Shown here: one piece after another, positions 21,365 through 60,185 of the stretch
Layout: every line of letters starts with the position of its first letter
Position numbering within the stretch: the stretch's first letter is position 1
Origin: Ruditapes philippinarum
Lineage: Eukaryota
Direction: 5' to 3'
DNA: 64,000 bases
NCBI RefSeq assembly: GCF_026571515.1
Contig: NW_026866679.1
Span: 1 to 64,000 of the forward strand
The notes under the pieces: model-generated
The model's input: the letters and a program-made list of their open reading frames with translations, nothing else
What the model was told of the DNA's origin: nothing
Databases searched by the model: none
Position numbers and translations under genes: made by a program

Positions 21365-21460
21365 TTTCCATAACAATGATCAAATATTAAGTACAAAACA
21401 ATTTCCAATATTTAGTAAATGAACCGCCAATTTTCTTCTGACGAGAGCTTCAGATAAAAT
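21365..21460 (-). promoter_or_regulatory. Orphan copy of the conserved upstream module (no intact exon downstream)
   Basis: ttccataa...tccaatattt (21404)...ccaatttt...tgacg (21439) aligns with 27361-27450, with the same 35-bp offset between halves. Confidence 0.6.
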
Positions 21461-23660
21461 GTTCTCTCGTGGAATATAAATTATGCCCCAAAGGATTAAC
21501 GGTAATTTAAGATACATTGTCTGACTTTACCTTTTAAAAATATTGCGATGAACTGTCCCTTCTTATGGTAACCCTCTAACAATGATTTATTCATCAGTTG
21601 ATCATTGTGGTTTTTGAAGCCAGATAATTTAGATACATTTAGTTTCTCTTTTTTTAAAATGCTGTGCGTTAAAATACTTAGTAAACTTTAAAAAAAGTTT
21701 ACATATAAAAGTACATACATGTCTTATCATTATAAAACCATATAAATGTAAGACAATATATGGTAAAATTGATTATTTCTACAATTACAATGGACAAATA
21801 CAGTGATATTGATTCATTTATGATTAAGATATAAAATAGTTTGTAACAACGCATCAAAACAGGTTTTAAAAATGATAGTAAGCTCACATATTCCATATGT
21901 ACCAAATGTAATTGTAATCAATCTTAAAACGCTCTTACTACAATAATTATTACATTCTATTCAAGATGTGATTTTCTTCTCAATTACTTACCTCACATTT
22001 TAAATATTATTTTTAGTTAATTTAATTCGTATGGGAATGTTTTTTTATTTAAAATGTGTATTTGAAGGAAAACCTTTCTTTAAAAAAATCATGTCAAATG
22101 AGTAAAAGTTATGTAAGTAATTTCACATTTCAGTTCTAAGATAGGCTCAAAGTTTTGTTTTCCTATTAGGAGAAAGTAGTTTATTTATTTATAACATTCT
22201 ACAGAAATTTCAGCAAAATCAACAAAATCTTAATTCAAAGAGTATACTGGATAAAACGATTTAAGGCATGACCCTGACGTTTACCGACTTTAACCAGGAA
22301 AACAGTGATCATAATTAAATCTTTCACGCCAAATTTCTATGATTTACAAAATTTAACATTAAGACGTCACTCTAATTAATATATAGAACACAGTTTATAC
22401 AATGAAATATATCTACCAAGATGAAATGTTTAATTTCTCATAACAGCAACACTAAAAACACATTCTTTCATTCATATCAAAGAACAATGAAGAATATATT
22501 TCAACTGTAAAAGGAATGTTCAATCTATTTTGAATAGCCAACTTGTGGTAAACCGATCCCATACCATTTTCATTGCCTTTTTATCAAGAACGCGGATCCA
22601 ACAAAGGGGATATTAATCCACATTGAGCTTTATTATGATGATTTCTGTACTAGCGGTAATATTTTAAGATGAATATCATTGATCTTACTCCCAAATGCAT
22701 TAACTTGTACGCCAACATTCAGAAATTTGCCATACACTTTGATTTCTTATACGTAGCACCGTGAATGAACTGATCTTATATGACTAATAAGATAAAATAA
22801 GATCGCTTGTATTTCATTAGATTCCCTTTCTTTTCTCTGAAGCGGCAATAAATGTACCATAAAGACGGAATACTGTAAACATTGTTTGTATCTATTCGTA
22901 CACATTTTATATAGATAGGCTACTGAAAGTGTTCTTGTGAATATTTCTTCCAAGGAAATTGTTTTAAAGACTTGCGCTAAAGTGTCCATAAACCATTAAA
23001 CAAAGGCTTTTTAGCCAGTAGCAATTGCACGTTTTCTCCTTGTTTTTGTTATAACCGAAACATAAATCTTAAGATTATACAAATGTTCTATAACAAGCAT
23101 CGCACCTTTTCAAGTTTTAAATATGTATACCCAATATGTAATTGCAAAAGAAAAAAATCTCATACAGTACATACACATTGCAAATAGCCATGTGCTTACT
23201 TTGTTAGTTCTTATAATTATAAAATTATAAACTATGACTAAGAACACCAAATACTTTTGTCTACCATTTTTTCAAAATAAAGAAAGGGTTAAACAGTATT
23301 CAAGTCAAACGGAGTATGTATGGGTCTTTCACAAATTAGATATTTATTAAAAAACATAACATTAAAATAATGTAACAATTCTAAAAGCTAATAAACAAAT
23401 AATTAAACTTATCATGACCTATGTCAATATTCAGATAACACATTTGAAGTACATGTATCAGGAGCGCTTTTCTTCATTTCATTATAATTTTTTTCTTAAA
23501 TACGTTTTTAAAAATGTTGTTATTTTCTCCTTTTTAAACAGTTATCCGGACAGAACAGACTTTTGATGTCCATTATCAATGTCGTCTTTTAATTGTTAAG
23601 TTAAAATAGTTTAAAAGAAGAAAAGGGAATTCAAAACAAAATGATAAGGCTTCTACTTAC

Positions 23661-23760
23661 CAATAGGTATCGTCAGACCCTCGTTAGATGCGTTCATTAT
23701 TCCAGAGAGAGTACTTAAATAAAGTACAATTAATATGCCAGAAAATATTCTATAAGTCAT
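23661..23760 (-). CDS. Alternative first coding exon A: MTYRIFSGILIVLYLSTLSGIMNASNEGLTIPI-G (signal peptide; probable ionotropic glutamate receptor)
   Basis: aaaATG start, 33 codons + 1 nt, hydrophobic core, phase-1 donor G/gtaagt. Paralogous to four other exons. Confidence 0.85.
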
Positions 23761-24198
23761 TTTATTTACACTAGATTTGTAACATATATTTAATCTAATT
23801 CAAAGTTTGGATATTCTTTTGACGATCAATGCTCTCTGCAAATCATATGCATATGTTTATAAAATATTACATATCCAACAACACGAGTGCCGATTTATGA
23901 CTAATTTGTTTAGCAAAGGCCAATGTTGTGTCTAATTGTCTGGACTTGCAGCATGCATTCTACGTGCACTGACTGAATAAGACCTTAACAAAATCCAACC
24001 TTATTTGTCACAATAATCCCTATGCTATTTTCAAACAAAGCCTCTTTGTAAACATTATACCTTGACAAGAAACTTCTTGTTTAACCGTTAATGCAAACAC
24101 TCAAAGGACAAAAACTTAAAACAATTTTTGTTTAACATGATCTCATAGGAATGTTGCAGCTTAAGAATAAGATGAAGTACTATAGCAACAGAAAGAAA

Positions 24199-24285
24199 TT
24201 TCCATAAGAAAGAGAAATGTATTGTTACTAAAATCCGATATTTGGTTAGAGAATGTCCAAATTTCATTTGACGCAGATTTTCGTA
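24199..24285 (-). promoter_or_regulatory. Conserved upstream module of exon A
   Basis: tccgatatt at 24234 and tgacg at 24269; 474 bp upstream of the ATG. Confidence 0.65.
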
Positions 24286-25435
24286 TCGTTTCTCGCTAAG
24301 TATGGAAATAGGGCCTCGAAGGCAGCTAGTTATAAACAAATTCCATTCTATCTGAAACGTATAATTACTTTATTAATCTATTAGATGGAAACGACATTCC
24401 ATAATGGGAGAAATAAATGGAAATTTCTACAAATCCCTTCCCACAGCTCAGTGCCAAAATTACGAAAATTTCTCTGGAAAAAGTACATTGAAAAGAACTT
24501 ATCAATAGTATTTGTTATGAAAGTTAAATGACATTTTTTTGTAAAATTAATTTAGTTTTTATTGAAATCTTCCACTGATGAGAAACAGAAAAAATAAATA
24601 TAAAAATTCATAAACAGAATTTATCGCTGATACACGCATTGCAAACTCATTACTTTGAGTTCTTCTAAAAAAAAGTCAGATGTATTTTCAAAAACAACAA
24701 CAAAACAAAAACAATTTTTTAATTGGACATATTAAAGATATCAAGGCAACGTCATATTAGAATCATAGAATCATAACTGTGTTTACCACTTTAAAAGATA
24801 CTCAAATTTTATTTTATCTTAATATGACAAATTAAGAATAGAACAATTATAGTATTGAAAGAAAAAGATAACTATTGCAAAAGCAAGTTCAGTCTTTAAA
24901 TTCAAATATTAATCATTCATATGGAACGCTTTATCAAGGAACAAAATGAATCATGTGCAAATAATTCATTAGATTTAATTAACATTCAAACATGTTCAGC
25001 GTAACTACCCAATTAAATGCTGTATTTCGAAATGTATCTGTTTAAAAAAATATTTCTAAACTTTTCAGCAAAACGTTTAGTATTGTAGTTACATTGCATG
25101 TTAAAAGTGAGCGGAAAGGTAGGATATTTGATTAAGTTAAGACATAAGTCTCCATAAAATTTGACATATGAGGCGACTCTTAGCCGAGAACAATGTAGAT
25201 CAATAGATATTGTTTGCACTTTATTACTTCGAAAAGTTCTTGGATGAAAAGTAAAATGAACACATAAATGGACTGATTTATAATAAGGAAAATATTTGAA
25301 GATAAAAAAAAAGTATTTTGTTTGAGACATTGAGATGGATGTAAAATTAAAATTAAAATATGAAACAAGCACACGTTTAGAATATTTTACTTTCTAATTA
25401 CCCACATAACAAATTAAACTAAATATCCGTAATGA

Positions 25436-25683
25436 AATGAGCCGCCTCACGACAAAACCAACATATTGCGTTTGCGACCAGCATGGATCCAGACCAGCCT
25501 GCGAATCCGCGCAGTCTAATCAGGAACCATGCTGTTCGCTTACAAACCCTATACATGTAACAAGGAGTGAAACTGATAGCGAACAGCATGGATCCTGATC
25601 AGACTGCGCGGATGCGCAGGCTGGTCTGGAACCATGCTGGTCGCAAACCCATTATGTTTGTTTTGTCATGACGCGGCTCAAAT
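25436..25683. mobile_element. Fold-back MITE of a type common in venerid clams
   Basis: Near-palindromic ~245 bp: tgagccgc...gcgaccagcatggatccagaccagcctgcg / cgcaggctggtctggaaccatgctggtcgc...gcggctca. Confidence 0.9.
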
Positions 25684-26785
25684 AATGAACGTCATGTAAA
25701 ATGTGATCAGCTTGTTAGCTGTTGAAATACCTTTAATGTCAAATAAAAGAAGTACATGTATCTCAGGATTTTGTTTTGTGGTAGTAAGTATTGTTTTTTT
25801 ACATATTTTGATTATTCTGTTTCATATATGTACTGTTCATTAAATGCCATTTTGATTAAAAACATATATATAATTATTACCATACAAGTAATTAATAGGA
25901 AACAGGTAATTTATTGACACTGTACCTGTACATATTTGTTAATATGGTTCTGACACTCAGAATGACTGTTAGTTCTTCTTGTAATTTTCCTTTTCCTAAT
26001 TACTTCAATTAATAATGAAAATAATTCATTTGTTGGATTAAAAACCGTCTTTTATGTGTTGTAATTTATGAATACTGAATATTAAGAACTTGTATATTCT
26101 TTGTATATACTTGAGTAAAATTGAATAACTAAATTTTAGTACACAGAACCTGCTTAATTGATGCAGTGATAATTCGAATCTAGTCATTGATACAATTTAA
26201 TACATTAGGCGCCGAAGCAAAGTGCAAAAAGACAGTCGTAACTCACACGCATATCGATTATTTGCCCTAGAGATATGTCCTATGCGCATCTTACTTTTGG
26301 ATTTAATGGTCAGCGATGTGATATACTTCATTAATGTTTTAACGAAATATTGTTCCTCAAAAGATAAAAGGGGCCTTATCATGTGTTCCTTTTATTATAT
26401 GATTGTAAACTCAAGTGGGTTTGGTTTTCTCCTTAAAAAGATGAGATTGAAAATCAGCCATCTTTGGTTTATTGGTGAGTTGACGCCAGGGAAAGGTCTT
26501 ATTTTTCACACATTCTATTATCATAGGAAATTAGGCAAATAACATCTTACAGGAATCTGTGACAGTCATAACCTAATCATTTGATATTTGTATTCACAAA
26601 TGTATTTTACTGATGGTTATTTTGTTTACTTTAACATTGTGATGAAATATTGGCCGTAAAATTGGCACGAAAACTGTATCTTGTATATTTTCATAAATAT
26701 TATTAATCTTATTTATGGAAATATTAATCATAAAAAGGGAGAATTTGGCATATAAAACATTTAGAACTGTCTACAAGTTACTCAC

Positions 26786-26885
26786 CCATTGGTATAGTCA
26801 CTCCTTCATTAGATGATTGTATTAATTCAGGATATGTGAAACAATAACACACTACTAAAAACAATACTAAACCATTCCAAGACAT
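26786..26885 (-). CDS. Alternative first coding exon B: MSWNGLVLFLVVCYCFTYPELIQSSNEGVTIPM-G
   Basis: acaATG start, 33 codons + 1 nt, hydrophobic core, phase-1 donor G/gtgagt. Confidence 0.85.
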
Positions 26886-27360
26886 TGTGATGAAATACTC
26901 TTATCTTCTGTGATTGTTTTACATACAAATGTGCAGCATGCTGATAATACAGGAGTCAGATGTAGTAATTTTGATGTTTAGCTATTAATTAAATATTAAC
27001 ACTTTCGTGGTCCGTAAGCTTTTTTCATTTAAACGTTGTTTACTAGTTGTTAATCACAGACGCAAATACATCATTGTTAGAAAATATATTAAAGAACTTA
27101 TGCATTAGATCAAATGACTGCATGATGTCAAATCTTTTATCATATGTTTACTTAAATGCATTGCTTACAATTCACACGATTCTTTAAGACAAACAAAATT
27201 ATTACCAAAAAACTAGAACACTGTCAATCCAAGTACTATCACATTAAAATCGTCACACATTACCGTCCATCATATGTGAGAATTCAGAAACATATCTTAT
27301 ACAATATAGAAATGTCACAGCCTTCACAATTAGAAAAATAGTCGGAATTACTGGAAGGCA

Positions 27361-27450
27361 TTTCCATAATAGACAGAATGTTTAGTAACTAAAATCCAAT
27401 ATTTGGACAGAGAATGCCCAAATTACGACTGACGCTGATTTCTGTGAAAT
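27361..27450 (-). promoter_or_regulatory. Conserved upstream module of exon B
   Basis: tccaatatt at 27395 and tgacg at 27430; 510 bp upstream of the ATG. Confidence 0.65.
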
Positions 27451-29288
27451 TTTTATTTTTATTTTCTATTGGCAAAACAGGGTATGAAATGCGACAGACA
27501 GCTCTGACTCGTGTTTCATTACAGTTTATAGAAACATTTCATCACAGCCGTAGTTCATTTTCATTGTATGCAGTGATTCATAGACAGACGACTGTTCTTT
27601 TTATGCAGAATTTTGTACATGTAGATGCAAATACTGGGTAGATAAAATATATTACATTTCGTGCTTGACAAAGATCAGCTATATAAAAATGTCTTGTCAT
27701 TTACTTATATGTTAAATTTATTATAGTGCAAAATAATGTGTATGTATATTCATAAAAAAATCACAAAATTAGAATGCATTAATCGCTGTTAAGACTTTAA
27801 GTACTTTCGCTATTCTTTCAGTATCTGTTTTGACATTGTTTCTTAACATGATATATGTTTTTTCCAGACTAACAAATTCATGAGTCAATATAAAATATTT
27901 AGTTTTAAAGAATAATTTAGTAGTAAGACTTTCATTATACTATAACATTTCTCTTGAAATGGTAAAACAACCCTATATATCTCTTTTTTTAACACAGTAA
28001 AAAGAAAACAATGTATAGAATTCGATTGCCTTACAAATCTGTAAATAAATGCTGCAAATGCTTAGCTTTATATAAGAGTGAGATGTTTTTATCTTCCGTC
28101 AAGAATAGTTTCCAGTAATGTTGATATAATAACTGTTTCAGAAAAAATAACGTTAATTATAGTTCGGTTAATTCAAAATTGCTTTAACTAGATACTTAAA
28201 TGTCATAGTAATTTTACTAACAATTCCCCTGAAACTTAAAACTGTACAGAAATGACTTCAACTTAGTTAAAGCATACGAGCCTGAAAAGGTCAATGTTCA
28301 TAGCGAATGCTGGTTGTTTAAGATTAGAATGCTTTTTATTGATAAAAATTGGTTTATAGATATTAATAATGGCATTTGTTGTTACGTGTGTGTATATGCA
28401 TTTCCATTTGACGCAAAAGACCAGCCAACATATAATAAAATATTAAGATATAGTTTCTTTTTCATCTACTTATTGATCGGCTGGCCCTAAATCAGTTGAC
28501 ATTTATCGCATATTTCACTCAAAGTATGTTCATATGTTTGAATCATTTTATTTTGCTCAACATAGATGACCATACTATTACAATTATCTTTAAGAAATGA
28601 CTATTCGTTTTTTAAATATCATAGTTCAACTGCTTATAAAAAAGACGATCTGTTATCAATATCTGTTTACTAAAAAAGCAATGTTCTTATGTTTCTGAAA
28701 CAATAACTGAAAAGAAAGTACAATAAATCGATGTTTATAGACAAATGTTTCGGGCGCTTCTGGAACAATTATTTTTGCTTGTTCTAAAGATGAAAAAAGG
28801 ACATTATAGATAATATGTTTTCAATAAGCTAAAGAAATTATATATTCTAGATGCAACATAATACTTGTTAAATGTAACTATAAGGTACTCATGAAAGAGG
28901 GAAATGCATATGGTTATATTTTTGTTGTTGTTTGTAGACTTGTTTTTTCTGTCATTTTCACTAAGATATTTACACACAATTTCAACACTTATGGGTATCA
29001 ATTTCAGACTTTTATATAAAATGAGAATATGTTACAGCATTTATGCAGTCATTATTACGAGATTATTGTATTTGGAAGTTTAAGTCGTCTGTATTGAGTT
29101 CAAATGGATATTTGTTTACACAGCTGTATTTATAACATAAAAAATAAAATTACGCTTGTAAAAAGAAACAATGCCTTTTTTCAATTTATCTTGTATACCT
29201 TTACAAATCTTTATGATGTTATATTTAAATTAAAAAATGTAAGAACTCAGATATCGAATCAACAAAAAATGTTTAGTATGTTACTCAC

Positions 29289-29388
29289 CAATTGGTATGG
29301 TCACCCCTTCATTAGATGACTGTATTAATCCAGGATATGTGGAAAGACAACACACTACTAAATATAGCATTAAACCATTCCAAGACAT
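29289..29388 (-). CDS. Alternative first coding exon C: MSWNGLMLYLVVCCLSTYPGLIQSSNEGVTIPI-G
   Basis: acaATG start, 33 codons + 1 nt, phase-1 donor G/gtgagt. Synonymous differences from exon B (CAA/CAG, GGA/GGG, ACT/ACC, TTG/CTA) and no indels. Confidence 0.85.
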
Positions 29389-29726
29389 TGTAATATAGAA
29401 TAGCTTCATATAAAAAATTGCAATAAGCTAAACACAGGCTAAGAAGTTGGGTTTTTTGTTAAATGTTTTATGTTAAACTATTTAATAATATTTTTTACTC
29501 TTTATACATGGGCGTTACATCACATGCGTTTGTAATTTCAAATATCTTTAAGAAGCAAACAAATCTAAAACACAGGAATACTGTCAATGTAATGAACACG
29601 AATTATCCCGTTTGAGATGTCACAAATAACTATCCATCATTTGAGAGAATAAAGAAGCATATTTTTATCCTACATAAATGTCACAGCTATAACGATTAGA
29701 AAAAAGTCAGAAATACTGGGAAGGCA

Positions 29727-29812
29727 TTACCATAATAGACAGAATGTTAAGTAACTAAAATCCAATATTTGGACAGAGAATGCCCAAATTACATCTGACG
29801 CTGATTTCTGTG
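29727..29812 (-). promoter_or_regulatory. Conserved upstream module of exon C
   Basis: tccaatatt at 29761 and tgacg at 29796; 373 bp upstream of the ATG. Confidence 0.65.
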
Positions 29813-32800
29813 AGGAATATTTTTTTTCTATTGGCAAAACAAGATATAAAATACTCTCGTGTTTCATTACAGTTTATAAAAGATGTTTCATCCCAGCCTA
29901 ATTTTTTCATTGTATGCAGTGATTAACAGACAAACAAATGAGTTTTTTTATGCAGTGATTTAAAGTTGAAAATACTGGATAGATAAAATATGATAATCAT
30001 GTCAGAGTGCATTGCTTTACGAATACTTACTCTATCAGATTTGTCTTTCGTTCGTATCATTTCATGTTATTATCATTGCATTGCAACACTTTATGTTTAT
30101 TTATTTTGCAAGTTAGAACGCAAGCTTTATATTATTTATGACTTTCAATTCAATTTAAATCGTTCTTTTATGAATTGGTAAATCAGCTACATTGTATGTG
30201 TGCCTTGTTAAAACCCCCCAAAAAAATAAATAATTACATATGAATTTCTATGAACCTAATGAATAATTGACGCGAACGACCTACAGATATGCTGTAAATA
30301 TTTAGATTAAATTTCTATTTTCAGAGTTTGTTTAGGGAAATACAGCTTTTATATAACCATGTTTACATGTTTACTCGTTGATCGGAGTGTCTTGACATTA
30401 TATCTCGCATTTTTAACTTAAAGTTTAATTGACTCTAAAGATTATTTTATTTATAAAATATTGATAAGAATACCTTATAACAAACATGTTTTTCACAATG
30501 CCGGTCTGTTAAAAATATTTGTTTATTGTACACAGTCACATACTTGCAATATTTCTGAAATGATCAATGCTTTTATTTATACTTATCAGTGAGGGACTTG
30601 GTTTTATCTGTATGATAATATCCATATCACCTACAGTATATTATCCACAGCGTGTGTGATATGGCTCTGCCGAACTATAATGAAAACGTTTTATGTTTTA
30701 TGATTCCATAAATTTTATTGTAAAATTTTGTTCCAGATGACATATTTCTCGATTGAATTACCATTAATTCTCAAAATGTGGTAATAGTTACCATGCAATA
30801 ATGAACCGCCTTGAATTATTTTTCTTAGCGTAGCGTTCGCGTAGCCGTTAAACGTCTGGCGTCATCTTCTTTGTAAACGTGTGTTTACCTGCGTTCCCAT
30901 GAAATGAGTCGAAAACTGCTCTTATTATACTTAAAAGGCAAAAAAATAAAAACCAATTTGTTTTTCGTGAATATACTATATATCATACATCGAAATGACA
31001 AAATGTCCACATTTTGCGCTAATTTTCTCACTTGTCAATGTGATATAAACCCTTAAAAAACCGATTTTATATTCCGGGAGCCTCTGAAATTATATTTTTG
31101 CTTGTTTAAAAATTCATCAGACATAAACTTTTATGAGTTTAAAAAATATCTTAAATAAAATATGAAATTAGTGTTATTTAACCTTAGTGTTATTTAACCA
31201 TGGTTGAGTTAATAAATTAAAGAAGTTTTATACTTAGGAGAAATTATTTCTCAAACTGATGCGTCAAAATGTGTAATGTTTTTCTCATTGCAAACTTACT
31301 TTAAGATGTTTAAACACGGTTTTAAAGCTTTAATAAATGTATCAAATTCTTAATAGTTTCTCTACATTTCCTAAGCTCATTGTACAAACCTATCTGTAAA
31401 TGAATTAACTTAGAAATGCCTGCACAGTCAGTCTAAGTGGTATAAGAAAGTGAGAAAATGATATTGTAGATACTTTTTTTCGTGACTAAACTTATAACGC
31501 CGCTGAAAACCAATTTGTTAAGGCAAGACCGAACGGCAGAAAATCCGGTTAATCGATTAAGTTCCCATGAATAATATCTTGTTCGCCTAAAAAGTGCAGA
31601 GTTGAGGATATATAACATCGGCCACATTCTTTGAAAGGCAATGAATATTAATACCATAATATGTTTGTGTTCATTGTGTTAGTCTGAGAGCTTCTAAATG
31701 CGCAACAACAAAAAACATGTTAAAAGTATTTTTCATTCTTTATATAAGCCCAATGGAAATAAAACATAAATTCAAAAAAGAAAATAACTTCTTCAAAACT
31801 CTATACATGACATATAATAGACAAGATGACATAGGCAGTCATCTTAAAGTTCGTGGTGGATTGTCGCTTGATCAATTTCAAAATATTTTGAAGTCGAAAT
31901 ATTCCCGTGGCGTGAGTAATATTCTTCCTTAAACATATAAAGTTGTCATAAAATGGTAACTATATGAAAATTATATTTATATAAATAAAGTAAAACAGTC
32001 TTAAAGTAAAATGTAACAAAATCTAAATCATTCTAAAACGTCAAGTCGTCTTTAGAGTGGGGACACGTTTTCAGAACAATTCTAGAAAATGTTCCAATGA
32101 TTTCCTTACAAGTCATCGTATCTTTACGGCGTTAAGGAGCAAATACAATGCGAGTCAATACGTCTCCTTTAATTGTATTGATGCAGCGAGATTTCATATA
32201 ACAATAGACATGCTCTTAATTAAGGAGGTCATAGAAAAGCTCTTAACACCAGAAACTAATATAAAATATGAGAAAAATCTACTAAAAATGTACATATAAA
32301 TCAGTAACCAGAAAGAAAGCGAAAGCTACAATATAAGCTATATATTAGCAATATGTGTTATATCAAAATGACGTCTAACCAGTTATTTAAGTTTTCCCTT
32401 TTTTTTGTAGTTTTCAATTACGTTATTCTTTTCATATTTAGTGTGGTATATATAAGTATATTTAATCTCGAATATGTGCGATGCTTCTCTCAACAAGTCT
32501 CAATAGCTACAAGATGTATTTATTATCCTACATGCCAACAGAATATCCGAGTAGATCTAGATTATCAATCTTTTTAAACCATCAAAACAAACAGTGATAG
32601 CATAGTAAGTAGATTCTACATGTACTTTAAAAGTGTTTGAAAACATCGATATTTTCTATAGGTTACTGGTGTTATGCAAATGATTTCGGTGAATCTCAAT
32701 AAACAGTGCAGTTTTTTATAAACGAAATAAACGAAATGTTTCGTTGCAGTAGCTTAAATAATTTGAACGTGCTAAAATTGTTTGGGTGACAGGCCGTATG

Positions 32801-41400: not shown

Positions 41401-41624
41401 AATCTAGATTCTCGCAAGGTCAGGTAAGTTAAAAGAACATGCATAAAAAATTAAAATTCAACTTGTAAAAGCATGTAAAACTAGAACAGTAATGATTATA
41501 ACCTACAGACAAAAGAGTTTGTTTTAACGGGTAGGTGGCGATATATTCTTAAGCATTTGTTGTAAAACATTTAAAAAGTTCCCGTACCGTATATTTTTAT
41601 GTCTGTCACATAACAAAGTGTCTG

Positions 41625-47925: not shown

Positions 47926-48028
47926 CAACAGGTATCGTTAATCCTTTATATGATGCTTGTTTAACTCCAGAACAAATAAAAAAACTCAAACCCAAAAACG
48001 CATGTGTGAATAAAGACTTATAGATCAT
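47926..48028 (-). CDS. Alternative first coding exon D: MIYKSLFTHAFLGLSFFICSGVKQASYKGLTIPV-G
   Basis: aaaATG start, 34 codons + 1 nt, phase-1 donor G/gtaagt. Corresponds to the first half of ORF-track entry 47843..48028. Confidence 0.83.
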
Positions 48029-48639: not shown

Positions 48640-48715
48640 CTCTCTAAAGGATAGATACTGTTAGAAAACGATATCCGATATTCTGTAAGAGAACATGAAA
48701 CTTAATTTTAACTTC
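48640..48715 (-). promoter_or_regulatory. Diverged upstream module of exon D
   Basis: tccgatattctgtaagagaa at 48674; the second half has decayed to taact at 48709; 646 bp upstream of the ATG. Confidence 0.45.
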
Positions 48716-49979
48716 CTTTTCATTAAAATAACACTTAAACGGTCATTTAAAATGGATATTAAATGAATACTAACTAAAATGGAAAGGAAAATCATTTTAT
48801 TTTAACTCTTGATATAAAGAAGTTTTTTTTTAAAGTAGTAGTTTCTGCTCGAAAAAAAAAACAAACAAACACACACATTGATTCGCGAGTGCTTATTAGC
48901 AATACAACAATTATGATGTTTCAAAATATACTATCATTACATTAAATATCAAAGTAATTATACAAGACTCGGGTGTGCGTATGAAGTCCATAAAAACATC
49001 GTTATTTTACAAACCTTACACATTCTCTACAAAAAGCGGTAGATGTCTGAAGCAGTTCAGAGTCAGCCAAATGTTATGTCGTTGGCATTCATCGTTCGTC
49101 TTACAAAGCTTGACATAATTTCTTTAAAATCGCGTGACCTATTTGTTTGCGGTGTTCGTTTTTAGCTGATCTCGAAAGATTTCAACTTCTTATGCGTTTC
49201 ATAAATTTATAAAAAGCAAAACTATCTAATAAAATATAAAGATACCACTATTCCAATTAAAAGAACAATGGAATGTTACTTATTTTTTGTATCAGGAACA
49301 AACTTTGTTGACAATTTCGGAGATAACAGGTTGTATCTTAATGAAAAAGTGAAAATATTTTTGAAGCAATACTTCTTCATTTTTATTATCAGACTGAAAT
49401 ATTTTATCGCTTGAAGAACTATATTTTAGAGAAACATGTAACATTGATCTCAAAACAATACTTTCCTTTATTTTAATTATTCTACATTATACACTTTTAT
49501 TTTCACGGTGTCAACTTTTTAAACGAATTGTTTTGCGTTTTATAAAGCTAATTCTGATTTAAATAGTAGGATTTCATTGTCCTGTTAGGCTAGTGACTTG
49601 CATGTAATTAACAGTGTATTCCAAAAATCAAGATCAAAATTCAAGCAAAATTTGAATCCTTGTAGAGACAGACTACCGTAGACAACGATTTTGTCTTGCA
49701 AACACCTCATAGCTAATGCATTTATTTGACTGTCTAACGTCACTCACAGATAGATATATTTAGTCTTGCAGCTATTTCCGAAATGTTGAATTTTTCATGA
49801 GAATAATTGAATTGAAATGTTTACTTTACTTTTTAAGGAAATTTACAGCACTAGAGTTGTCAATTCCGTAAAGTACTATTAATAATATAGTTTGCTGGAA
49901 ATACACAATGTATATTTTTCATTCTGTTAGTTATATACTGCAAATGTTTCGTCTTATATACGCTCGAAGCATACAATGA

Positions 49980-52900: not shown

Positions 52901-53240
52901 GAGGGATAATGAATAAGTGCAACATCCCTCACGCCCCTAGCACCAGCATTGAACGCCGCCTTTCATTGTTGATCTTGTTTATCATATTTTGAGCAGTACT
53001 CAATTCTCAACACTTAATAGTTCTGGCATCAATGATCCTGAAGGACCAGAAAAATATAACTAAACAACAAAAAACAAGAATAAAGATCAACAAGGCAAAG
53101 GCAACGTTCACAGGACGCGGCCCCCGACACAGTCAAAAAACCTAGAGCGGACATAAGGGTGAAAGGGGTGGGACATGTAATGTGAAATAATATCAACTAA
53201 AACGGTCCCATAAGGGAATTAAAGGGATAAGTACTGTAAG
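49980..53240 (-). mobile_element. Cluster of rearranged Penelope-like (probably Naiad-type) retroelement fragments, UTR/pLTR-like segments
   Basis: Two diverged copies of ggaacacagagggg..ccgc.ttggaac...actggggagtttaaac (50670-51040, 51730-52060). Repeated gacaaggaaaggcggcattcaatgaacg blocks. Adjacent RT remnant. Confidence 0.7.
52110..52515 (-). pseudogene. Penelope-like reverse transcriptase C-terminal remnant (second partial copy at 52630-52815)
   Basis: ACSNVKDFNERNIFITGKLLKLGYRYY*LRKYFTKFY...ISQPDFYGDVVYKLRKI...LRHTACLVFNPFTV resembles the thumb region of molluscan PLE RTs. It has in-frame stops and a break at an A-run. Confidence 0.85.
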
Positions 53241-56200
53241 GGTGAAAAGGTGTGCACTGAAGTGAAGTACGGGGCAACTTTCTACAGATGCCACACGGCA
53301 CTTGCCATCAGCTGTTGTGAAGTATAAAAATCTGGAAAACAAAGTGATGCCTCGGAAGCATAATCTAGACTGTACATTTTGGACAAATTGCCCCTTCCCC
53401 CCACCCCTTCAAAGTACTCTTGATGATGATTTATGACAATAATGAGACTCAGTAAGAGGAAAACTTTGTGGTTTGATATCATCAGTTAAAGTACAAGGAA
53501 TTTTATTTTACTGGGTCGGGTGGGGGCTACGTTCATTGAATGCCGCCTTTCCTTGTCGGATCAAATGGTGTCTAATATTTTGCTCCTCCTGTAATTACTG
53601 CCAACAGGTATGAATGTATGTATCACATTTTTATTACAATAATGAGACTCAGTAAGAGGAAAACTTTGTGGTTTGATATCATCAGTTAAAGTACAAGGAA
53701 TTTTATCAGGCCTGATTTGCTCCTCCTGTAATTACTGCCAACAGGTATGAATGTATGTATCACATTTTTATTGCTGATAAAATTGTGGATGTGGATATGT
53801 CAAGTGTATCTCTATAAAAGTGTTGTCATAGTTAGATTTGTTCCCCATTCACAAGAAATGTATAATTTCTGGAAGTGTTTCTGTTTTTAGCTCACCTGTC
53901 ACAAAGTGACAGGGTGAGCTTTTGTGATCGCTTTTCGTCCGGCGTCCGTCCGTCGTCCGTCCGTAACCTTTTGCTTTAAATGACATCTCCTCATAAACCA
54001 CTGAGCCAATTTCATCCAAACTTCACAGGTTTGTTCCTTTAGTGGTCACCTTTAAAAATTGTTCAAAGAATTTAATTCCATGCAGAACTCTGGTTGCCAT
54101 GGCAACCGAAAGAAAAATCTTTAAATATCTTCTTTTAAACAACCCTAAGAGCTAGAGCTTAGATATTTGGTATGAAACCTCTTCTAGTGAGTGTCTACCA
54201 AGTTTGTTCAAATAAAAGCCCTGGGGTCAAAATTGGCCACGCCCCAGGGGGTCATTGATTTTCCCTATATATGCATATAGTAAAAACTTTAAAATCTTCT
54301 TTTAAAGAACCCAAAGAGCTAGAGCTACGATATTTGGCATGAAACATCTTCTAGTGAGTGTCTACCAAGTTTGTTCAAATAAAAGCCCTGGGGTTATAAT
54401 TGGCCCCGCCCCAGGGGGTCATTGATTTTCCCTATATATGCATATAGTAAAAACTTAAAAATCTTCTTTTAAAGAACCCAAAGAGCTAGAGCTAAGATAT
54501 TTGGCATGAAACATTTCTAGTGAGTGTCTACAAAGTTTGTTCAAATAAAAGCCCTGGGGTCAAAATTGGCCCCGCCCCGGGGGTCATTGATTTTCCTTAT
54601 ATGTGTATGGCAAAAACTTAAAAATCTTCTTTGAAAAAACCCATATAGCTAGAGTTTAGATATATAGCATGAAACATCTCCTAATCATCGTCTACAAAGT
54701 TTGTTCAAATAAAAGCCCCGGGGTCAAAATTGGCCCTGCCCCTGGGGTCATTGATTTTCCTTTTTTTGTGTATAGCAAAAACTTAAAAATCTTCTTTGAA
54801 AAAAACCAAATAGCTAGAGTTTAGATATTAAGCATGAAACATCTTTTAGTAAATATCTACAAAGTTTCTTCAAATAAAAGCCCGGGGGTCAAAACTGGCC
54901 CTGCCCCAGGGGTGTCATTGTTTTTAACTATATGTGTATAGTAAAAACTTAAAAAATCTTCTTTTAAAAACCCAATGAGCTAGAACTTAGATGTTTAGCA
55001 TGAAACATCTTCTTATGGGTGTCTACCAAGTCTGTTCAAATAAACAAATAAAAGCCCTTGGGTAAAAATTGGCCCGGGGGGGGGGCTATATACAGGTGAG
55101 CGACCTCAGGGCCATCATAGCCCTCTTGTTTTAGTTACCTTTTCCTTTACCGTGATACACTTCACTTAATTCAATGACGGTACTGCAAATGAATTTGTTG
55201 TGTTTTGAATAACATCCCTGTTTCCAAAATTCATGAAAAATTGCCTCCCTTTCTTCAGTATATATTTTACTATGACACTTTTTTACAACTTTGGCCGCAC
55301 CAACTATTTAGAATTCTTGCTTGCTTGATTTTACCTGATAAAATTGCATATGTTTCACCTGCGTTTTTTTCTTTGTTACATTTTTTCCACACATCTTCAA
55401 TTCTTTGCCTTTTACGGCTGCGTTTTGGAAAAAAAAGACACTTGAACACGGACAAGGACGTACCAGAGCCTTGAGACACAGCAGACTGGCTGGAACAAGG
55501 AATGGGAGAGACTTTTTTATGCAGGACCAGACTGCTGTGTCTAATCAGACTGGTGGAAACTAGATAGATATACAGGTAGCTGGAACTGATTGATGTCAAG
55601 TCAGCCTGATCTGTACTGATCATAGAGCTTTGTGGATCACACTTATGTGTCAGATTAGACTGTTCATTAATTAACAGTATTTGCTGTGTTGTGTCATTTC
55701 TTAAAGATTTCAGAATCATACTATCTGGTGTATTTTTAATTTCTTTAAAGTTGTTGAAAATCTCTATAAAAATTGAATCAAGAAGTGTGGTACTGTCATT
55801 CAAATTCTCAAACGCCTCAGATAAGTCTTTAATGCTGTAATTTGCTTCAATAGATGGAACACTGCTGACAGTTGACATACTAGATCAACCAGCATACCAT
55901 TTTGAATCACGTAAAGACGACATGCAAGATCCTCATTACTCACATCAGAAAAAAAAAGATAAATACAGAATCACATCAGAAACCATCAAAATTTGAACCA
56001 GGCATGTCTGTGTTGCCTGGAATGGCAAATACACTTACAGCTTCAAAATGAATATTTTTGTTTTTGTCAACTGAAGATTACAGATGTCGTATAAACAGAC
56101 ATAATGCAGAGATACTGTTTTGTACATGTATAGTGAACACAGCTGTTCCATCTGATCCTTGCATTCTAGTTTTATTTCTTGAATGTGGATCAAAAATTAA

Positions 56201-56595
56201 GGATCTTTCTTTGACAAATATGAGAGCTGTACTGTCACCTGGTGTCATGTTACCCATAGTAAAAATGCATTTGTTCCTCTCAGAATTGTCGTCAGGGCTT
56301 CTTCTAAAGTAAAATATGGGCACTTTTTTCTGGAGACTCATTGTTAAACCAGTCAGGACTTCATCGAATTTCAGGCAGTAATAAAAATAATCACACTGAT
56401 GTTTTAGATCTTCTATTATGAGATATCTATTGGCTTATTTTTTGTATGCAGGGTATATAAGTGCTCCAAAATATAATCAAGCATACCTAGACACCATTCA
56501 CTAACAGGTGTTTTATATGATTTAAGAAAAGCTTCCACAGATTTGTCATGCACTGCCTGTCGTTAGCACATTTGTTGTGGCACTTATGATTGTAA
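53240..56595 (-). pseudogene. Decayed Helitron/Helentron-type ORF with a herpes-tegument (peptidase C76) deubiquitinase-like domain
   Basis: RQCMTN/..AFLK..PVSEWCLGMLDYILEH-LY...YLIIEDL (56390-56570) and LIFDPHSRNKTRMQGSDGTAV (56135-56205), followed by the 202-aa ORF 55270-55878. Many frameshifts; interrupted by 53885-55132. Confidence 0.65.
53885..55132 (+). mobile_element. Non-autonomous Helentron-type (pearl/DINE-like) element with ~6 internal ~166-bp tandem repeats
   Basis: 5' agctcacctgtcac-aaa-gtgacagggtgagct hairpin, then a CGTC microsatellite. Repeats with agctaga at ~54150, 54316, 54484, 54647, 54812 and 54978. 3' caggtgagc subTIR plus agggccatcatagccct hairpin. Inserted in a T run. 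Confidence 0.92.
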
Positions 56596-56869
56596 CCTGG
56601 GGAAAAAAGACTTATTAAAGAGAATACTTTCTAAATTTATGATTAAAATATCTAAATTTACAAGAACAGTCAACAGAACAAACGTTAATACATATCGAGC
56701 CATGATCAAAGAAAACTAATGCTGAATAAATTTGAATTTAAAGAAAGACCAAAAAATATAATTTTCCATTCATTATGAAGAATAAAAAATTGCCTGTCAG
56801 ACTGCATCAAAAGTTATTTTGGATAATCATATTTTATTAAATTGCATTGAAACGTTGTTAACTTTGTAT

Positions 56870-57158
56870 CATTTTGTAAAAGTGAGATTTGTCTTAATTG
56901 AAGAAATATCTAAATTTAAACAATACAAATTGTTTATGTTTAATTCAGTGTTTCCAAAATAACATAGTTAATAAATATTTGTCTTCTTATATATTAAATT
57001 ATACAATTTCAAAATTTTGTAAAAGTGAGATTTGTCTAAATTGAAGAAATATCCAAATTTAAACAATACAAATTGTTTATGTTTAATTCAGTGTTTCCAA
57101 AATAACATAGTTAATAAATATTTGTCTTCTTATAAATTAAATTATACAATTTCAAAAT
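56870..57158 (+). repeat. Two-copy tandem repeat, ~143-bp unit
   Basis: agtgagatttgtct at 56881 and 57024; units nearly identical. Confidence 0.9.
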
Positions 57159-57298
57159 TCTCCCAAATTTATAACAATACAGAGACTAAGATAAAGATAA
57201 TCGCAAAGTCAAGTATTAAAAATCACTTTAAAACGGTTACTGTTGTTACATAACATGATGTAAACTAATGATATGTAAACATGATCTGTATAAATTGT

Positions 57299-57563
57299 TG
57301 GGGCGTCCGTGGCCGAGTGGTTAAGGTCGTTGACTTCAAACCACTTGCCCCTCACCGCTGTGGGTTCGAATAAATCCCAACAGATTCTTTCATGTGAGAA
57401 GCTATCCAGCTAGCTTACGGAACGTCGGCGGTTCTACTCAGGTGCCCGTTCGTGCCTGAAATAATGCACGGAAGGGCACCTGAGCTCCTCCTCTATCAGT
57501 ATAAATAGAACGTCGCCAAATGACCTATACTCTGTCGGTGTGACGTAACCCCCTAAAAAACCC
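57299..57563 (+). mobile_element. tRNA-derived SINE (RUDI-like) with 11-bp target-site duplication
   Basis: A box tggccgagtgg, B box ggttcgaa, A-rich tail. TSD gtataaattgt at 57288-57298 and 57564-57574. Confidence 0.92.
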
Positions 57564-59601
57564 GTATAAATTGTACATGAATTTGACTCTGATAATGTCA
57601 TAATTTGGCTCGGGCGATGGCATAATTGTGATGTCACAAACATAATTGCACTGAATAACCCCAATGAAGATGAAAATATTTTGGTGCAATAAGTGAATAT
57701 GTGGACTTGTATCATTCTTGCACGAAATTTAATTTAGTACAGAAATATTGGTGCAACAAGTGAATATGTGCACTTATTCAATTATTGCACTGAAATAAAA
57801 TTTAAATGTTAATGTTACATTTTGCTTTTATGTATTAAAGTCAAATTTTTTTATAAAGTATGGCTCCAATATTTTTTCAGGACATTAAATAACACTGTTT
57901 TTAAAATAATTTATTTTATAGCAAAAATAATTTTGAGAACATTTCCACTTATTGGAGTTTTTACCCTAAGATGACGCGCAACTATATTTTAGTTAAATCG
58001 TTGATTTTTAAGTTTGTGTCTATCAAACGATTTTGTTCAAACGAGTTATCATAAAACGATATTCTCTTTTTAGAAGAATTAAAATGCTTCTCAATTGAAA
58101 ATTACTGACAGTATAGATTAAAAGAGAAAATGCTTTCAGAATAAAATTTGTTAAGTATCATGGATTGTCTTTTGAAATTAAGAACAATTCCAAACAATAC
58201 AAATTGCTAGTCTTAACAATTACATTCCCACAATATATTTTTTCCAGTTTACAATTACTCTTATGTCGAAAGAGGCAGTCAACTAACTTAAGGTACATTA
58301 GGATGCGTTCAAGTTAGATGAATCGTCAATTACATCTTGTGTAACGTAGTTCGCTTCACGCCGTTAACAGACATACTTTTTGTGGAGTAAATAAATAACA
58401 AATAATGTGATCTTTAGGGAGAAAATAACGTAATAAAAAATCGGCTTCTCAACTATGCCTTAAGGTTATCATTTTGCTAAGAGTTTTAAAGCTACAATGG
58501 AATAATCTGGTTAAGATTACGTCACTCATGAACTGTTTGTTTTTGTATCTTTAATGTTCTCAACATTTATTTCTTTAAAGGAAATATGTCATATTTTAAT
58601 TTGACAAAGATTTAATTACTCAAACTGAGGTATGCTTTATATTTGACATACCGACAAACGAAGCAACACAGTCGGAAAGTCTTATATTTTAGTAACATTT
58701 CATTAGACACTACGTCTATTACAAACACGATAATGTGTATATGTATGTAACAGAGAGTTTGTTTTCTTTATAAATAATTTGAAAGTAATATTCATTTTAT
58801 TCTTAGAGGATTAAATTAATCAATAGACAACCCCCTGAGAATTTCCTCCTTTACTCTGTTTAGCACGTTAACAAACTGTAAAAAGTTTTTTCCCCAAGCT
58901 AGCTCATTACCACCTACAAAAGACAATGTCCAGTTAAGGCAGAAATGATAAATACTTAAATAATGAGACAGACTGACCTCAATGCTAAAAGTACGTACTT
59001 TATTCATAACGCCAATAAATTTGCGTTGAAGTTTTAAAAAAAGTGTTAAAAGAAACGTATATATTCAAATCGGATTGTGGTATTATAATAAATAAAACAG
59101 AATCACGTTTAATTGATGCCTTTATCAAATTGTTTGGGCATAGCTTTACGTTCGTTCAATAATATCTTCAAATAATTGAGTTTCATGTTTGTCTTTTTCT
59201 TAATTTGCACATATAATATTCTACTCATTCATTTTTTTCATGCTGCTCTCTTATAAATTGAATACAATCATTGAAATATAAATCATCAACTGATAATATG
59301 TCAAATAACTTTAAACTCTAAATTTCTGTTTCTAATGTAAGTTGTTTCTACAGAGGAATCCATGACATAATATTATTTTTTACATTGATTTATGTTTACT
59401 TAATTTTATATATCGTATAGCAAACGGTTTGCGTTCAGCGAACGCCGCCTTTCCTTGTTGATCTTGTTTACCATATTTTGGCTTATGTAACATTTGACTT
59501 GACCGATTTTAATAGCCTTTGGGAGAAAACTGCATGTAATGTATCGATGTTTAAATATTGCAAGTGTCATTCTCAATGATAGGAAAGGTTTTTAGACTTA
59601 C

Positions 59602-59701
59602 CTATAGGAATTGTCACTCCATCATATGATGTTTTTGTAATTCCAGGTGGAATTGTCAAGTAATATATAACGATCAAATAAGTATATTCATTCCAGTACA
59701 T
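59602..59701 (-). CDS. Alternative first coding exon E: MYWNEYTYLIVIYYLTIPPGITKTSYDGVTIPI-G
   Basis: aaaATG start, 33 codons + 1 nt, phase-1 donor G/gtaagt. Confidence 0.83.
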
Positions 59702-60119
59702 TTTGATACTCCGAAACATTTCCTTTTTGTTATTAAGTGTTAAAGCGGTATAAAAGTATTTTTATCTTAAAGAGTCATTAAGACTGTTAAGATATCACGA
59801 TATATGTCTCTTCAGTTAGTTATCTTTTAGATATTAGATGCATCAGAAATAAATTCATTTTATACATATTGACGAAATTGAAAAGCGTTATTCGGAACAT
59901 CAGTATTGTATTCTTAAAAACGTGGTCCAGAAATATATCGATTGTCAGTTTCTCCAATGAAATAACAGGAATAGATTCAATCGTCTGTATAAATCCTTCA
60001 ATATTAATAAAACCCTTACCGTGGAATAAGACACTTTATATTACATTAACAGAGGATTGTTTGAAATGTCATGCAATTGAGAAAATAATTAAATATAGGT
60101 TTAACGGAAAGGAAAGATC

Positions 60120-60185
60120 TCTTAGTTAAGAAACAGAAATCCGATATTTTGTCATGGAAAATAGCAGTTTTCGTTGACGTTTGTT
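60120..60185 (-). promoter_or_regulatory. Conserved upstream module of exon E
   Basis: tccgatatt at 60140 and tgacg at 60175; 439 bp upstream of the ATG. Confidence 0.6.

What the first reader, a model, noticed from the sequence alone, without database searches (positions are those of the whole stretch)
21404..60179. Fixed-spacing bipartite element TCCRATATT-N26-TGACG upstream of the variable exons
The offset between the two half-motifs is exactly 35 bp at 21404/21439, 24234/24269, 27395/27430, 29761/29796 and 60140/60175. At 48674 the first half is present and the second has decayed. Meanwhile the distance to the ATG varies from 373 to 646 bp and surrounding DNA hardly aligns. This parallels the conserved sequence element of clustered protocadherin promoters. 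TGACG is a CRE half-site. Alternatively, on the sense strand CGTCA could be an initiator (TCAGTC in cassette B) with a downstream core element.
Basis: partly seen in the sequence, partly recalled or inferred. Interest (0 to 1): 0.8.

Follow-up and report, generated by a model that had tools for sequence, protein, structure and literature searches.

The report
Conserved promoter block before alternative first exons
Six tandem cassettes in this AT-rich animal contig each keep the same roughly 75-base non-coding block a few hundred bases upstream of a tiny signal-peptide first exon, so it is most likely a shared promoter control element of a gene with several alternative starts, which is real but an ordinary kind of arrangement.

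Summary
TCCRATATT-N26-TGACG occurs five times on the + strand at the stated coordinates (0 expected), with a decayed sixth copy at 48674.

The motif is the best-kept part of an ungapped ~76-nt paralogous block. Its 45-nt core is 56-96% identical between copies. The flanks are 28-35% identical, which is random level.

The block exists only at this locus in the 1.4-Gb genome. It is not a repeat, has no Rfam match and has no conserved RNA fold.

Five blocks lie 373-646 nt upstream, on the minus strand, of intact first exons. Each exon has an ATG, a signal peptide, ...EG[VL]TIP[IVM] and a phase-1 GTRAGT donor. The sixth block (21404) has no recognisable exon.

The constant exons are not on this contig. 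A paralogous glutamate-receptor gene on C8334 has the same first-exon design. A glutamate-receptor gene at the end of contig C1257 has no first exon in the parts I could read, so it is a candidate partner.

Four RNA-seq runs showed only background, so no start site is placed. Reading CGTCA as the initiator is disfavoured: 9-21 upstream ATGs follow it.

Best reading: a selected cis-regulatory promoter module that was co-duplicated with each first exon. Earlier notes of this scan report similar first-exon arrays elsewhere in this genome.

The parts
21383..21458 (-). Block copy A (CGTCA at 21443-21439; AATATTGGA at 21412-21404). It has no recognisable first exon downstream.
   Evidence: 54.1 bits to model R1; no exon relic above shuffles.
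24213..24288 (-). Block copy B.
   Evidence: 63.3 bits. It is 78-80% identical to C and D over 88-93 nt.
23661..23760 (-). First exon B: MTYRIFSGILIVLYLSTLSGIMNASNEGLTIPI plus G, then donor GTAAGT (phase 1).
27374..27449 (-). Block copy C.
   Evidence: 69.3 bits. C and D differ at 4 of 80 positions.
26786..26885 (-). First exon C: MSWNGLVLFLVVCYCFTYPELIQSSNEGVTIPM plus G, then donor GTGAGT.
29740..29815 (-). Block copy D.
   Evidence: 69.9 bits.
29289..29388 (-). First exon D: MSWNGLMLYLVVCCLSTYPGLIQSSNEGVTIPI plus G, then donor GTGAGT.
48653..48728 (-). Block copy E. The second half has decayed (AGTTA instead of CGTCA on the sense strand).
   Evidence: 53.2 bits.
47926..48028 (-). First exon E: MIYKSLFTHAFLGLSFFICSGVKQASYKGLTIPV plus G, then donor GTAAGT.
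60119..60194 (-). Block copy F.
   Evidence: 54.3 bits.
59602..59701 (-). First exon F: MYWNEYTYLIVIYYLTIPPGITKTSYDGVTIPI plus G, then donor GTAAGT.

Best explanation
The spaced motif is the best-conserved part of a ~60-80-nt cis-regulatory (promoter-proximal) block. The block was duplicated together with a signal-peptide first exon, giving a tandem array of six promoter-plus-first-exon cassettes on the minus strand. Five are intact and one is a relic.

Each intact cassette would start its own transcript and splice its exon, through a phase-1 GTRAGT donor, to shared downstream exons that lie beyond the start of this contig. The host is most likely an AMPA/kainate-like ionotropic glutamate receptor gene. 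Because the variable exon is almost only signal peptide, all cassettes would yield nearly the same mature protein, so the array offers alternative promoters rather than protein diversity.

The block is kept free of indels by selection, most simply because two or more DNA-binding proteins must sit at a fixed distance. One would sit on the CRE-like TGACG side and one on the AATATYGGAT side. The centres are about 33 bp apart, roughly three helical turns.

Shown here: the block, its conservation above the flanks, its restriction to this locus, and the exons with their donors.
Inferred: promoter function, the binding proteins, the splice partner and the identity of the gene.
For: - The motif occurs 5 times against 0 expected.
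- All six blocks align without gaps over 76 nt with 22 invariant columns.
- Between cassettes, only the block and the exon give significant local alignments.
- Core identity is 56-96% and exon identity 54-86%, while adjacent 76-nt flanks are 28-35% identical, which is random level.
- In the youngest pair (C and D) the block has 4 mismatches in 80 nt and no gaps. The flanks diverge by about 27% with many gaps (P = 4e-7), and the coding exon has 14 mismatches in 102 nt.
- The block is restricted to this locus. Genome-wide there are 22 pattern matches against 11 for the control, and only these five are related. A DNA search finds only copies C and D. With the sequence model, the six copies score 53-70 bits and the next best hit 22.8 bits.
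- Exons: there are five ORFs with an ATG, a hydrophobic core, a conserved ...EG[VL]TIP[IVM] and G|GTRAGT.
- A homologous 35-aa exon ORF exists in an ENA metagenome contig from another organism.
- Host gene: a bona fide glutamate-receptor gene on C8334 carries ANF and Lig_chan-Glu_bd exons. It has four signal-peptide first exons ending ...PDG[IV][IV]VPI|G in the same phase, and an exon 2 starting AIF....
- A paralogous exon 2 lies at C1257:86410-86556(-). It has a phase-1 acceptor and sits 9.4 kb from that contig's end. No signal-peptide first exon was found in the 7.6 kb of those 9.4 kb that I could read.
Against: - There is no transcript evidence. Four RNA-seq runs gave at most 2x coverage, which is background level, over three exons and two blocks.
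- No constant exon was found on the minus strand at 1-21 kb or anywhere on this contig, so the 'shared constant exons' are inferred.
- Cross-species conservation could not be tested.
- The conserved block may partly reflect gene conversion in the youngest pair.
- The copy without an exon (A) still carries both exact half-motifs, so an exact motif can persist without a working cassette.
Confidence: 0.6

Rival explanations
1. Core-promoter reading. Transcription starts at the A of CGTCA, used as an initiator, and AATATYGGA starting at +28 is a downstream core element. The fixed spacing would then be core-promoter geometry.
For: With A of CGTCA as +1, AATATYGGA begins exactly at +28, the classic DPE position. 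This follows from the sequence. Three to four copies read GTCAG(A/T), which resembles an initiator. An indel-free interval is what such geometry predicts.
Against: A contiguous leader from CGTCA to the ATG would be 412-685 nt long with 9-21 upstream ATGs, which is no depletion. That is unlikely for a translated mRNA unless an unseen 5'UTR intron exists. The +28 to +32 bases (AATAT) do not fit the DPE consensus as I know it. Copy E has lost CGTCA yet keeps an intact exon. No reads pile up at this point.
Confidence: 0.12
2. Neutral remnant. The block is conserved only because the cassettes are related by duplication or patchy gene conversion, and it has no function.
For: All copies are paralogues at one locus. 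Copy A keeps the motif although its exon is gone. Expression was not detected.
Against: In every pair except C/D the surrounding DNA has decayed to random identity, while the block stays at 56-87% in its core and free of indels. In C/D the block is significantly better kept than its flanks (P = 4e-7) and better than the coding exon. Conversion tracts would have to hit the same 60-80 nt in all lineages.
Confidence: 0.12
3. Architectural or choice element. The block binds an insulator-type or looping protein that links one cassette at a time to a distal enhancer, as CTCF does at the protocadherin CSE. This would give mutually exclusive promoter choice between cells.
For: One copy sits in each cassette, all in the same orientation, with variable distance to the exon. 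There is a formal parallel with the CSE/SSE pair, where spacing is critical (PMC3333863).
Against: There are no data on expression per cell, no enhancer was identified, and the block has no demonstrated similarity to a CTCF site. With only five working cassettes and an identical mature protein, there is little to gain from stochastic choice.
Confidence: 0.1
4. RNA-level element, mobile-element fragment or small gene. The block is part of a structured RNA, a repeat, or a coding exon on the + strand.
For: An ATG-started ORF on the + strand begins inside the block in copies B, C and D. An ATTTGG/CCAAAT inverted repeat is present in B, C and D.
Against: No consensus secondary structure exists (0 pairs). 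There is no Rfam match and no tRNA. No copies occur elsewhere in the genome. The + strand ORFs stop after 7-12 codons in A and F, and the position of their ATG shifts between copies. The inverted repeat is absent from A, E and F.
Confidence: 0.04

Closest known systems
Conserved sequence element (CSE) of clustered protocadherin promoters
   Same: A short motif is shared by the promoter of every variable first exon in a tandem array. It lies upstream of each exon. Its function depends on a fixed distance to a neighbouring element (the SSE-CSE spacing experiments in PMC3333863).
   Different: The CSE is a ~22-bp core bound by CTCF and common to about 50 promoters that drive large ectodomain-encoding exons. 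Here the block is 60-80 nt, AT-rich and present in six copies at one locus. It has no known binding protein, no demonstrated promoter activity, and exons that encode only a signal peptide. Sequence similarity to the CSE was not tested.
Genes with multiple variable first exons (UGT1A, GCNT2, NOS1, glucocorticoid receptor; Zhang, Haws and Wu 2004, as cited in PMC1885805)
   Same: There is a tandem array of first exons, each with its own upstream region and a splice donor, presumably joined to common downstream exons. Evolution follows birth and death, with relic copies such as cassette A here.
   Different: In UGT1A the variable exon encodes the signal peptide plus a substrate-binding domain. 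Here it encodes essentially the signal peptide only. The common exons were not found on this contig.
Paralogous glutamate-receptor gene on contig C8334 of the same genome
   Same: It has four signal-peptide first exons ending ...PDG[IV][IV]VPI|G with a phase-1 donor, followed by an exon 2 starting AIF.... Three of them share a conserved block about 280-540 nt upstream of the ATG.
   Different: Its upstream block is not detectably homologous to the one here; alignment scores are no better than shuffles. One copy has CGT-N33-YGGA at the same offset, with P about 0.03, but the CpG has decayed in the other two.
cAMP response element half-site (TGACG/CGTCA)
   Same: The pentamer is present in five of the six copies.
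   Different: A pentamer is weak evidence. Only copy F has the longer ACGTCA. Binding was not tested, and copy E works without it, to the extent that an intact exon indicates a working cassette.

Membership tests
Multiple-variable-first-exon gene architecture | Tandem array of first exons, each with a start codon and a 5' splice donor but no acceptor | tested here: met
   There are five exons with an ATG, a signal-peptide-like core and G|GTRAGT in phase 1. Spacing in the tight part of the array is 2.4-3.2 kb.
Multiple-variable-first-exon gene architecture | Each first exon has its own upstream promoter region | tested here: inconclusive
   A conserved block lies 373-646 nt upstream of each ATG. 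No transcription start could be placed, because RNA coverage was at background.
Multiple-variable-first-exon gene architecture | All first exons splice to one shared set of constant exons | tested here: inconclusive
   No constant exon lies on the minus strand at 1-21 kb or elsewhere on the contig. A candidate exon 2 lies at C1257:86410-86556(-) with a compatible phase. The junction is not shown, and I left the joined model out.
Protocadherin CSE | ~22-bp core motif common to all variable-exon promoters of the cluster (PMC3333863) | tested here: inconclusive
   A common conserved core exists in all six cassettes. It was not compared with the CSE consensus, because I had no tool-derived CSE sequence.
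Protocadherin CSE | Bound by CTCF and required for promoter activity | not testable with these tools
   This needs ChIP, EMSA or reporter assays.
Protocadherin CSE | Variable exons encode the variable extracellular part of the protein | tested here: not met
   The exons encode 33-34 residues, a signal peptide plus about 10 conserved residues. The mature proteins would be nearly identical.
Initiator plus downstream promoter element core promoter | Initiator at +1 and a DPE-consensus hexamer at exactly +28 | tested here: not met
   The spacing fits, since AATATY starts at +28 from the A of CGTCA. The bases do not fit the DPE consensus as I know it. The implied leader carries 9-21 upstream ATGs.
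Ionotropic glutamate receptor (host gene) | ANF_receptor, Lig_chan-Glu_bd and Lig_chan domains in the same gene | tested here: inconclusive
   None are on this contig. The support is indirect. Confirmed glutamate-receptor genes on C8334 and C13056 have the same intron position and phase after ...[IV]x[IVM]-G. Six mGluR-like or guanylyl-cyclase-like ANF genes have no intron there.
Interspersed repeat / transposable element | Multiple dispersed copies in the genome | tested here: not met
   Only the six local copies were found.
Structured non-coding RNA | Conserved secondary structure or an Rfam match | tested here: not met
   There are 0 consensus pairs, no Rfam hit and no tRNA.

The most novel reading that the evidence does not exclude
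A bivalve glutamate-receptor gene is run by a protocadherin-like promoter-choice system. Six cassettes share one choice element with strictly fixed internal spacing, and each neuron or sensory cell type activates a single cassette. All of them produce the same mature receptor. This would be a purely regulatory 'variable first exon' cluster in an invertebrate, with the conserved block as the docking site for the choice machinery.
Probability: 0.1. Interest if true: 0.7.

Novelty: new member of a known kind. Interest (0 to 1): 0.38.

Why it matters
If the block is the working promoter core of each cassette, it gives a compact, testable handle on how a mollusc gene selects among tandem alternative first exons. 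The handle is two conserved halves at a fixed spacing. Earlier notes of this scan suggest that such tandem first-exon arrays are frequent in this genome. It would also show that first-exon arrays can exist purely to diversify regulation, since the encoded protein hardly changes. In itself it is a locus-specific conserved promoter element, which is expected wherever promoter-plus-exon units are duplicated and kept.

Tried and rejected
- **Known RNA or repeat.** An Rfam scan of the window gave no hit and there are no tRNAs. A consensus fold of the six blocks has 0 pairs. A transposon or repeat origin is rejected because there are no other copies.
- **Coding on the + strand.** ORFs through the block stop early in A and F and are not in register.
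- **Further shared motifs.** A k-mer search from 800 nt upstream of CGTCA down to the ATG found only AT-rich noise at null levels.
- **Exon relic in cassette A.** Not distinguishable from shuffles.
- **Constant exons in the window.** I scanned 141 open frames of the minus strand at 1-21 kb against Pfam and found nothing relevant. ANF_receptor and Lig_chan-Glu_bd searches of the whole genome gave no hit on this contig.
- **Neighbouring contig.** Searching with the first 6 kb found only a local tandem duplication.
- **Other ANF-domain exons.** Exons on C4269, C13756, C2577, C11429, C2461, C6335, C3328 and C8691 all carry their own signal peptide, so they are not partners.
- **RNA evidence.** Four runs laid on 23640-29639 gave background only.
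- **Profile search.** A profile of the five exon peptides against 1.84 billion proteins returned one 35-aa homologue, P0001 from ENA, and one irrelevant repeat protein.
- **JGI metagenome pattern scan.** Nine hits, all chance.
- **The protein-atlas search.** Closed.
- **Homology to the C8334 block.** Not significant.
- **Literature.** Searches found no description of this element or of such arrays in bivalve glutamate-receptor genes.


Full report
**1. The observation**

The pattern TCCRATATT-N26-TGACG occurs five times in the window. All five are on the + strand, at 21404, 24234, 27395, 29761 and 60140. None appeared in 100 dinucleotide-preserving shuffles.

The first half alone occurs eight times against 2.0 expected. 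The site at 48674 has TAACT where TGACG should be. The sites at 35274 and 57865 have no second half, no similarity around them and no exon downstream, so I take them as chance.

The window is AT-rich (about 29% G+C) and contains no N.

**2. What lies next to it**

The window is the first 64 kb of a 349,941-bp contig, G000:C15166, in a 1.4-Gb assembly. On the minus strand there are five short ORFs. Each begins with ATG, has a hydrophobic signal-peptide-like core, and ends with a conserved ...[NYD][EKD]G[VL]TIP[IVM]. One more G follows, and then the donor GTRAGT, which puts the junction in phase 1.

| Cassette | Motif start (+ strand) | ATG of first exon | Distance motif start to ATG (nt) |
|---|---|---|---|
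| A | 21404 | none recognisable | n/a |
| B | 24234 | 23760 | 474 |
| C | 27395 | 26885 | 510 |
| D | 29761 | 29388 | 373 |
| E | 48674 | 48028 | 646 |
| F | 60140 | 59701 | 439 |

tblastn with the five peptides finds no further copy in the window. There is none in the next 40 kb and none elsewhere in the genome. Downstream of copy A, an alignment of the exon scores no better than shuffles. Cassette A is therefore a relic or has lost its exon.

**3. The element is a block, not two isolated half-sites**

On the sense (minus) strand the six copies align without a single gap over 76 nt, with 22 invariant columns. The consensus runs ...GAAA..nCGTCA..n..AAnTT....TTC..T..C.AAATATYGGAT.T..., followed in A-D by TTATGGAAA.

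Mean ungapped identity per 10-nt bin rises from about 0.3 outside to 0.55-0.68 across the 'spacer' and 0.91 at AAATATYGGA. The Y/R position alternates ATCGGA with ATTGGA, a CpG-to-TpG change. The fixed 35-bp offset therefore follows from an indel-free homologous block.

**4. Is it more conserved than its surroundings?**

Sensitive pairwise BLAST of whole cassettes (about 3 kb each) returns only two kinds of island, the block and the exon. Pairwise identities are shown below.

| Segment | Pairwise identity |
|---|---|
| 45-nt core of the block | 56-96% |
| Coding exon | 54-86% |
| 76 nt on either side of the block | 28-35% on average (random expectation for this composition) |

In the youngest pair (C and D) a sliding window shows 95-97% identity without gaps at 27355-27434. 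The coding exon is 80-90% identical. The flanks are 55-80% identical with many gaps. Four mismatches in 80 nt against about 27% flank divergence gives P = 4e-7, and against the exon rate P = 0.005.

Block and exon group the cassettes the same way: C with D, then B; E with F. This fits duplication of the whole promoter-plus-exon unit.

**5. Is it a general motif, a repeat or an RNA?**

- Genome-wide, the exact pattern has 22 matches against 11 for the reversed control. Apart from the five here, the matches are chance or belong to an unrelated palindromic repeat.
- A DNA search with the 156-nt block region finds only copies C and D.
- A sequence-only model of the six copies scores them at 53-70 bits, and the next best place in the genome scores 22.8 bits. 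Only 150 of many first-look candidates were scored.
- There is no Rfam family, no tRNA and no consensus secondary structure.
- A k-mer search of the upstream regions finds nothing else shared beyond AT-rich noise.

The element is thus a locus-specific paralogous non-coding block.

**6. Transcription evidence**

RNA runs of the same species exist. I laid four of them (X6, X8, X12, X17) on 23640-29639, which is 6,000 letters covering two full cassettes and a third exon.

Coverage of exons and blocks was 0-2x. In the deepest run it was not above the diffuse background seen in 29 of 30 bins. No joints or start pile-ups fell in the cassettes. The only strong signal was a roughly 250-nt interspersed repeat at about 25435-25685.

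The array is therefore silent or very weakly expressed in these samples, and no start site can be placed.

**7. Where might transcription start?**

If the A of CGTCA were +1, AATATYGGA would begin at +28, the DPE position. However, the resulting contiguous leaders of 412-685 nt contain 9-21 upstream ATGs against 7-13 expected from composition. That is no depletion. Under the scanning model this argues against a contiguous 5'UTR from that point, unless there is an unseen leader intron. The +28 bases also do not fit the DPE consensus as I know it.

I therefore prefer 'upstream or proximal regulatory module' to 'initiator plus downstream element'. I cannot exclude the latter.

**8. The host gene**

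No constant exon is detectable downstream of the array. I scanned 141 open frames of the minus strand at 1-21 kb and found no relevant Pfam match. The genome-wide ANF_receptor and Lig_chan-Glu_bd searches give no hit on this contig. The contig begins inside a local tandem duplication, where 1-6000 resembles 8527-16368. That would explain an assembly break.

Indirect evidence favours the first-stage guess of an AMPA/kainate-like glutamate receptor (note s1-792596):

- **C8334.** A gene with ANF and Lig_chan-Glu_bd exons is preceded by four signal-peptide first exons (ATG near 54255, 59903, 68288 and 70461). They end ...QNYIPDG[IV][IV]VPI plus G with a GTRAG donor in phase 1. Its exon 2 begins (G)AIFTEEDRLAKTAFRYAL.... 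The weak best PDB matches of that exon are residues 20-61 of GluA3/GluA4 amino-terminal domains (E = 0.22).
- **C13056.** A glutamate-receptor gene there shows the same intron position.
- **Contrast.** Six mGluR-like or guanylyl-cyclase-like ANF genes have the signal peptide and the domain start in one exon.

The only clear paralogue of the C8334 exon 2 is C1257:86410-86556 on the minus strand. It reads ...tttcag|GT TCT ATC TTT..., that is (G)SIFDKDEQEAKTGFLFAVKNFN..., with a phase-1 acceptor. It belongs to a glutamate-receptor gene with ANF at 61170 and Lig_chan-Glu_bd at 52082 and 51004. It lies 9.4 kb from the end of its 95,956-bp contig.

I could read 7.6 kb of those 9.4 kb and found no signal-peptide first exon there. 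None of my exon queries hits C1257. Orientation is compatible with the end of C1257 abutting the start of C15166.

This is a candidate only.

**9. Relatives outside this genome**

A profile of the five exon peptides, searched against 1.84 billion representative proteins, finds one 35-aa ORF, P0001: MCKNNLMLCLVVCYLLVCTGIIETSTEGVTIPLGK (E = 1e-6). It comes from a single 4,128-bp ENA metagenome contig. It is absent from this genome; the best local match is 56% identical. It reads through a GTAAG donor just as the local exons do. The exon family therefore exists in another organism.

A degenerate-pattern scan of JGI metagenomes gave nine chance hits.

**10. Comparison with what is known**

Tandem 'multiple variable first exons', each with its own promoter, are well known for PCDH, UGT1A, GCNT2, NOS1 and GR (PMC1885805). 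Protocadherin promoters share a ~22-bp CSE that binds CTCF and works only at a fixed distance from the adjacent SSE (PMC3333863).

The present element resembles the CSE in position and in its fixed internal spacing. I did not test it against the CSE sequence. Its exons fail one defining feature of the protocadherin and UGT1A design: they do not encode a variable functional domain.

I found no paper describing this element or such arrays in bivalve glutamate-receptor genes. Earlier notes of this scan, which I did not check, call the genome Manila clam. They report several other first-exon arrays in it, for tolloid, neuroligin, claudin-like and lipoxygenase genes and for 'orphan' signal-peptide exons. 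The architecture is therefore recurrent here.

**11. A lead on deeper conservation**

In the C8334 array, three cassettes share an upstream block 280-540 nt before the ATG. One copy reads TGACGT...(33 nt)...CGGATCAGTTAC. This is CGT-N33-YGGA at the same offset as here, and the chance of that in 1.2 kb is about 0.03.

The other two copies have lost the CpG (TGACAT, TGATGT). Alignment scores between the two kinds of block are no better than shuffles. I record this as a lead, not a result.

**12. Verdict**

The interpretation as a conserved promoter-associated element of alternative first-exon cassettes is partly supported. Conservation above the flanks, restriction to this locus and co-duplication with the exons are shown. 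Promoter activity, binding proteins, the start site, the splice partner and cross-species conservation are not.

It is a new member of a known kind, of moderate interest.

Noticed in passing
window 25435-25685: A roughly 250-nt interspersed repeat draws up to about 14,000x RNA-seq depth in all four runs. The reads are 90-95% identical and only partly on it, and there are many 'opposite strands' joints around 25558-25581. It looks like an abundant transcribed inverted-repeat (MITE/SINE-like) element.
   Followed up: no
window 1-6000 versus 8527-16368: A local tandem duplication of an 8.5-10 kb unit (83-95% identity) lies at the very start of the contig. It is found nowhere else in the genome apart from ~100-nt dispersed repeats (4667-4762; 1182-1278). 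It is a likely cause of the assembly break.
   Followed up: partly
window 50000-56000: An island of higher G+C (0.37-0.41 against 0.29) holds six tandem ~166-bp repeats at 54082-55044, plus related GC-rich 60-nt repeats at 51234-52598. A 202-aa ORF at 55270-55878(-) has no Pfam match.
   Followed up: partly
window 56871-57156: Two tandem copies of a 143-nt unit, 98% identical.
   Followed up: no
G000:C8334:54225-72079 (L031, L032): A paralogous glutamate-receptor gene has four alternative signal-peptide first exons (ATG near 54255, 59903, 68288, 70461) upstream of exon 2 at 71930-72079. Three of them share their own upstream conserved block.
   Followed up: partly
G000:C1257:86410-86556 (L039): Exon 2 of a glutamate-receptor gene lies 9.4 kb from the contig end, and no first exon was found upstream in the parts read. 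It is a candidate partner of the array in this window. A mariner-like ORF fragment (MSYRTVCRWANKFASGRVSIENDTKSGR...) lies at about 95761.
   Followed up: partly
G000:C4269:31476-36685 (L005), and further hits on that contig: An array of ANF-domain first exons is spaced about 2.5 kb apart. Each has its own signal peptide and guanylyl-cyclase-receptor-like motifs (...GPDMSCLCESTVASAWNLPLIAYV). At least twelve such exons lie on both strands of the contig.
   Followed up: no
It is unrelated to the block studied here.
   Followed up: no
P0001 (ENA metagenome contig, 4,128 bp): A 35-aa ORF from another organism is homologous to the first exons here, including read-through of a GTAAG donor. Its contig could not be fetched.
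   Followed up: partly
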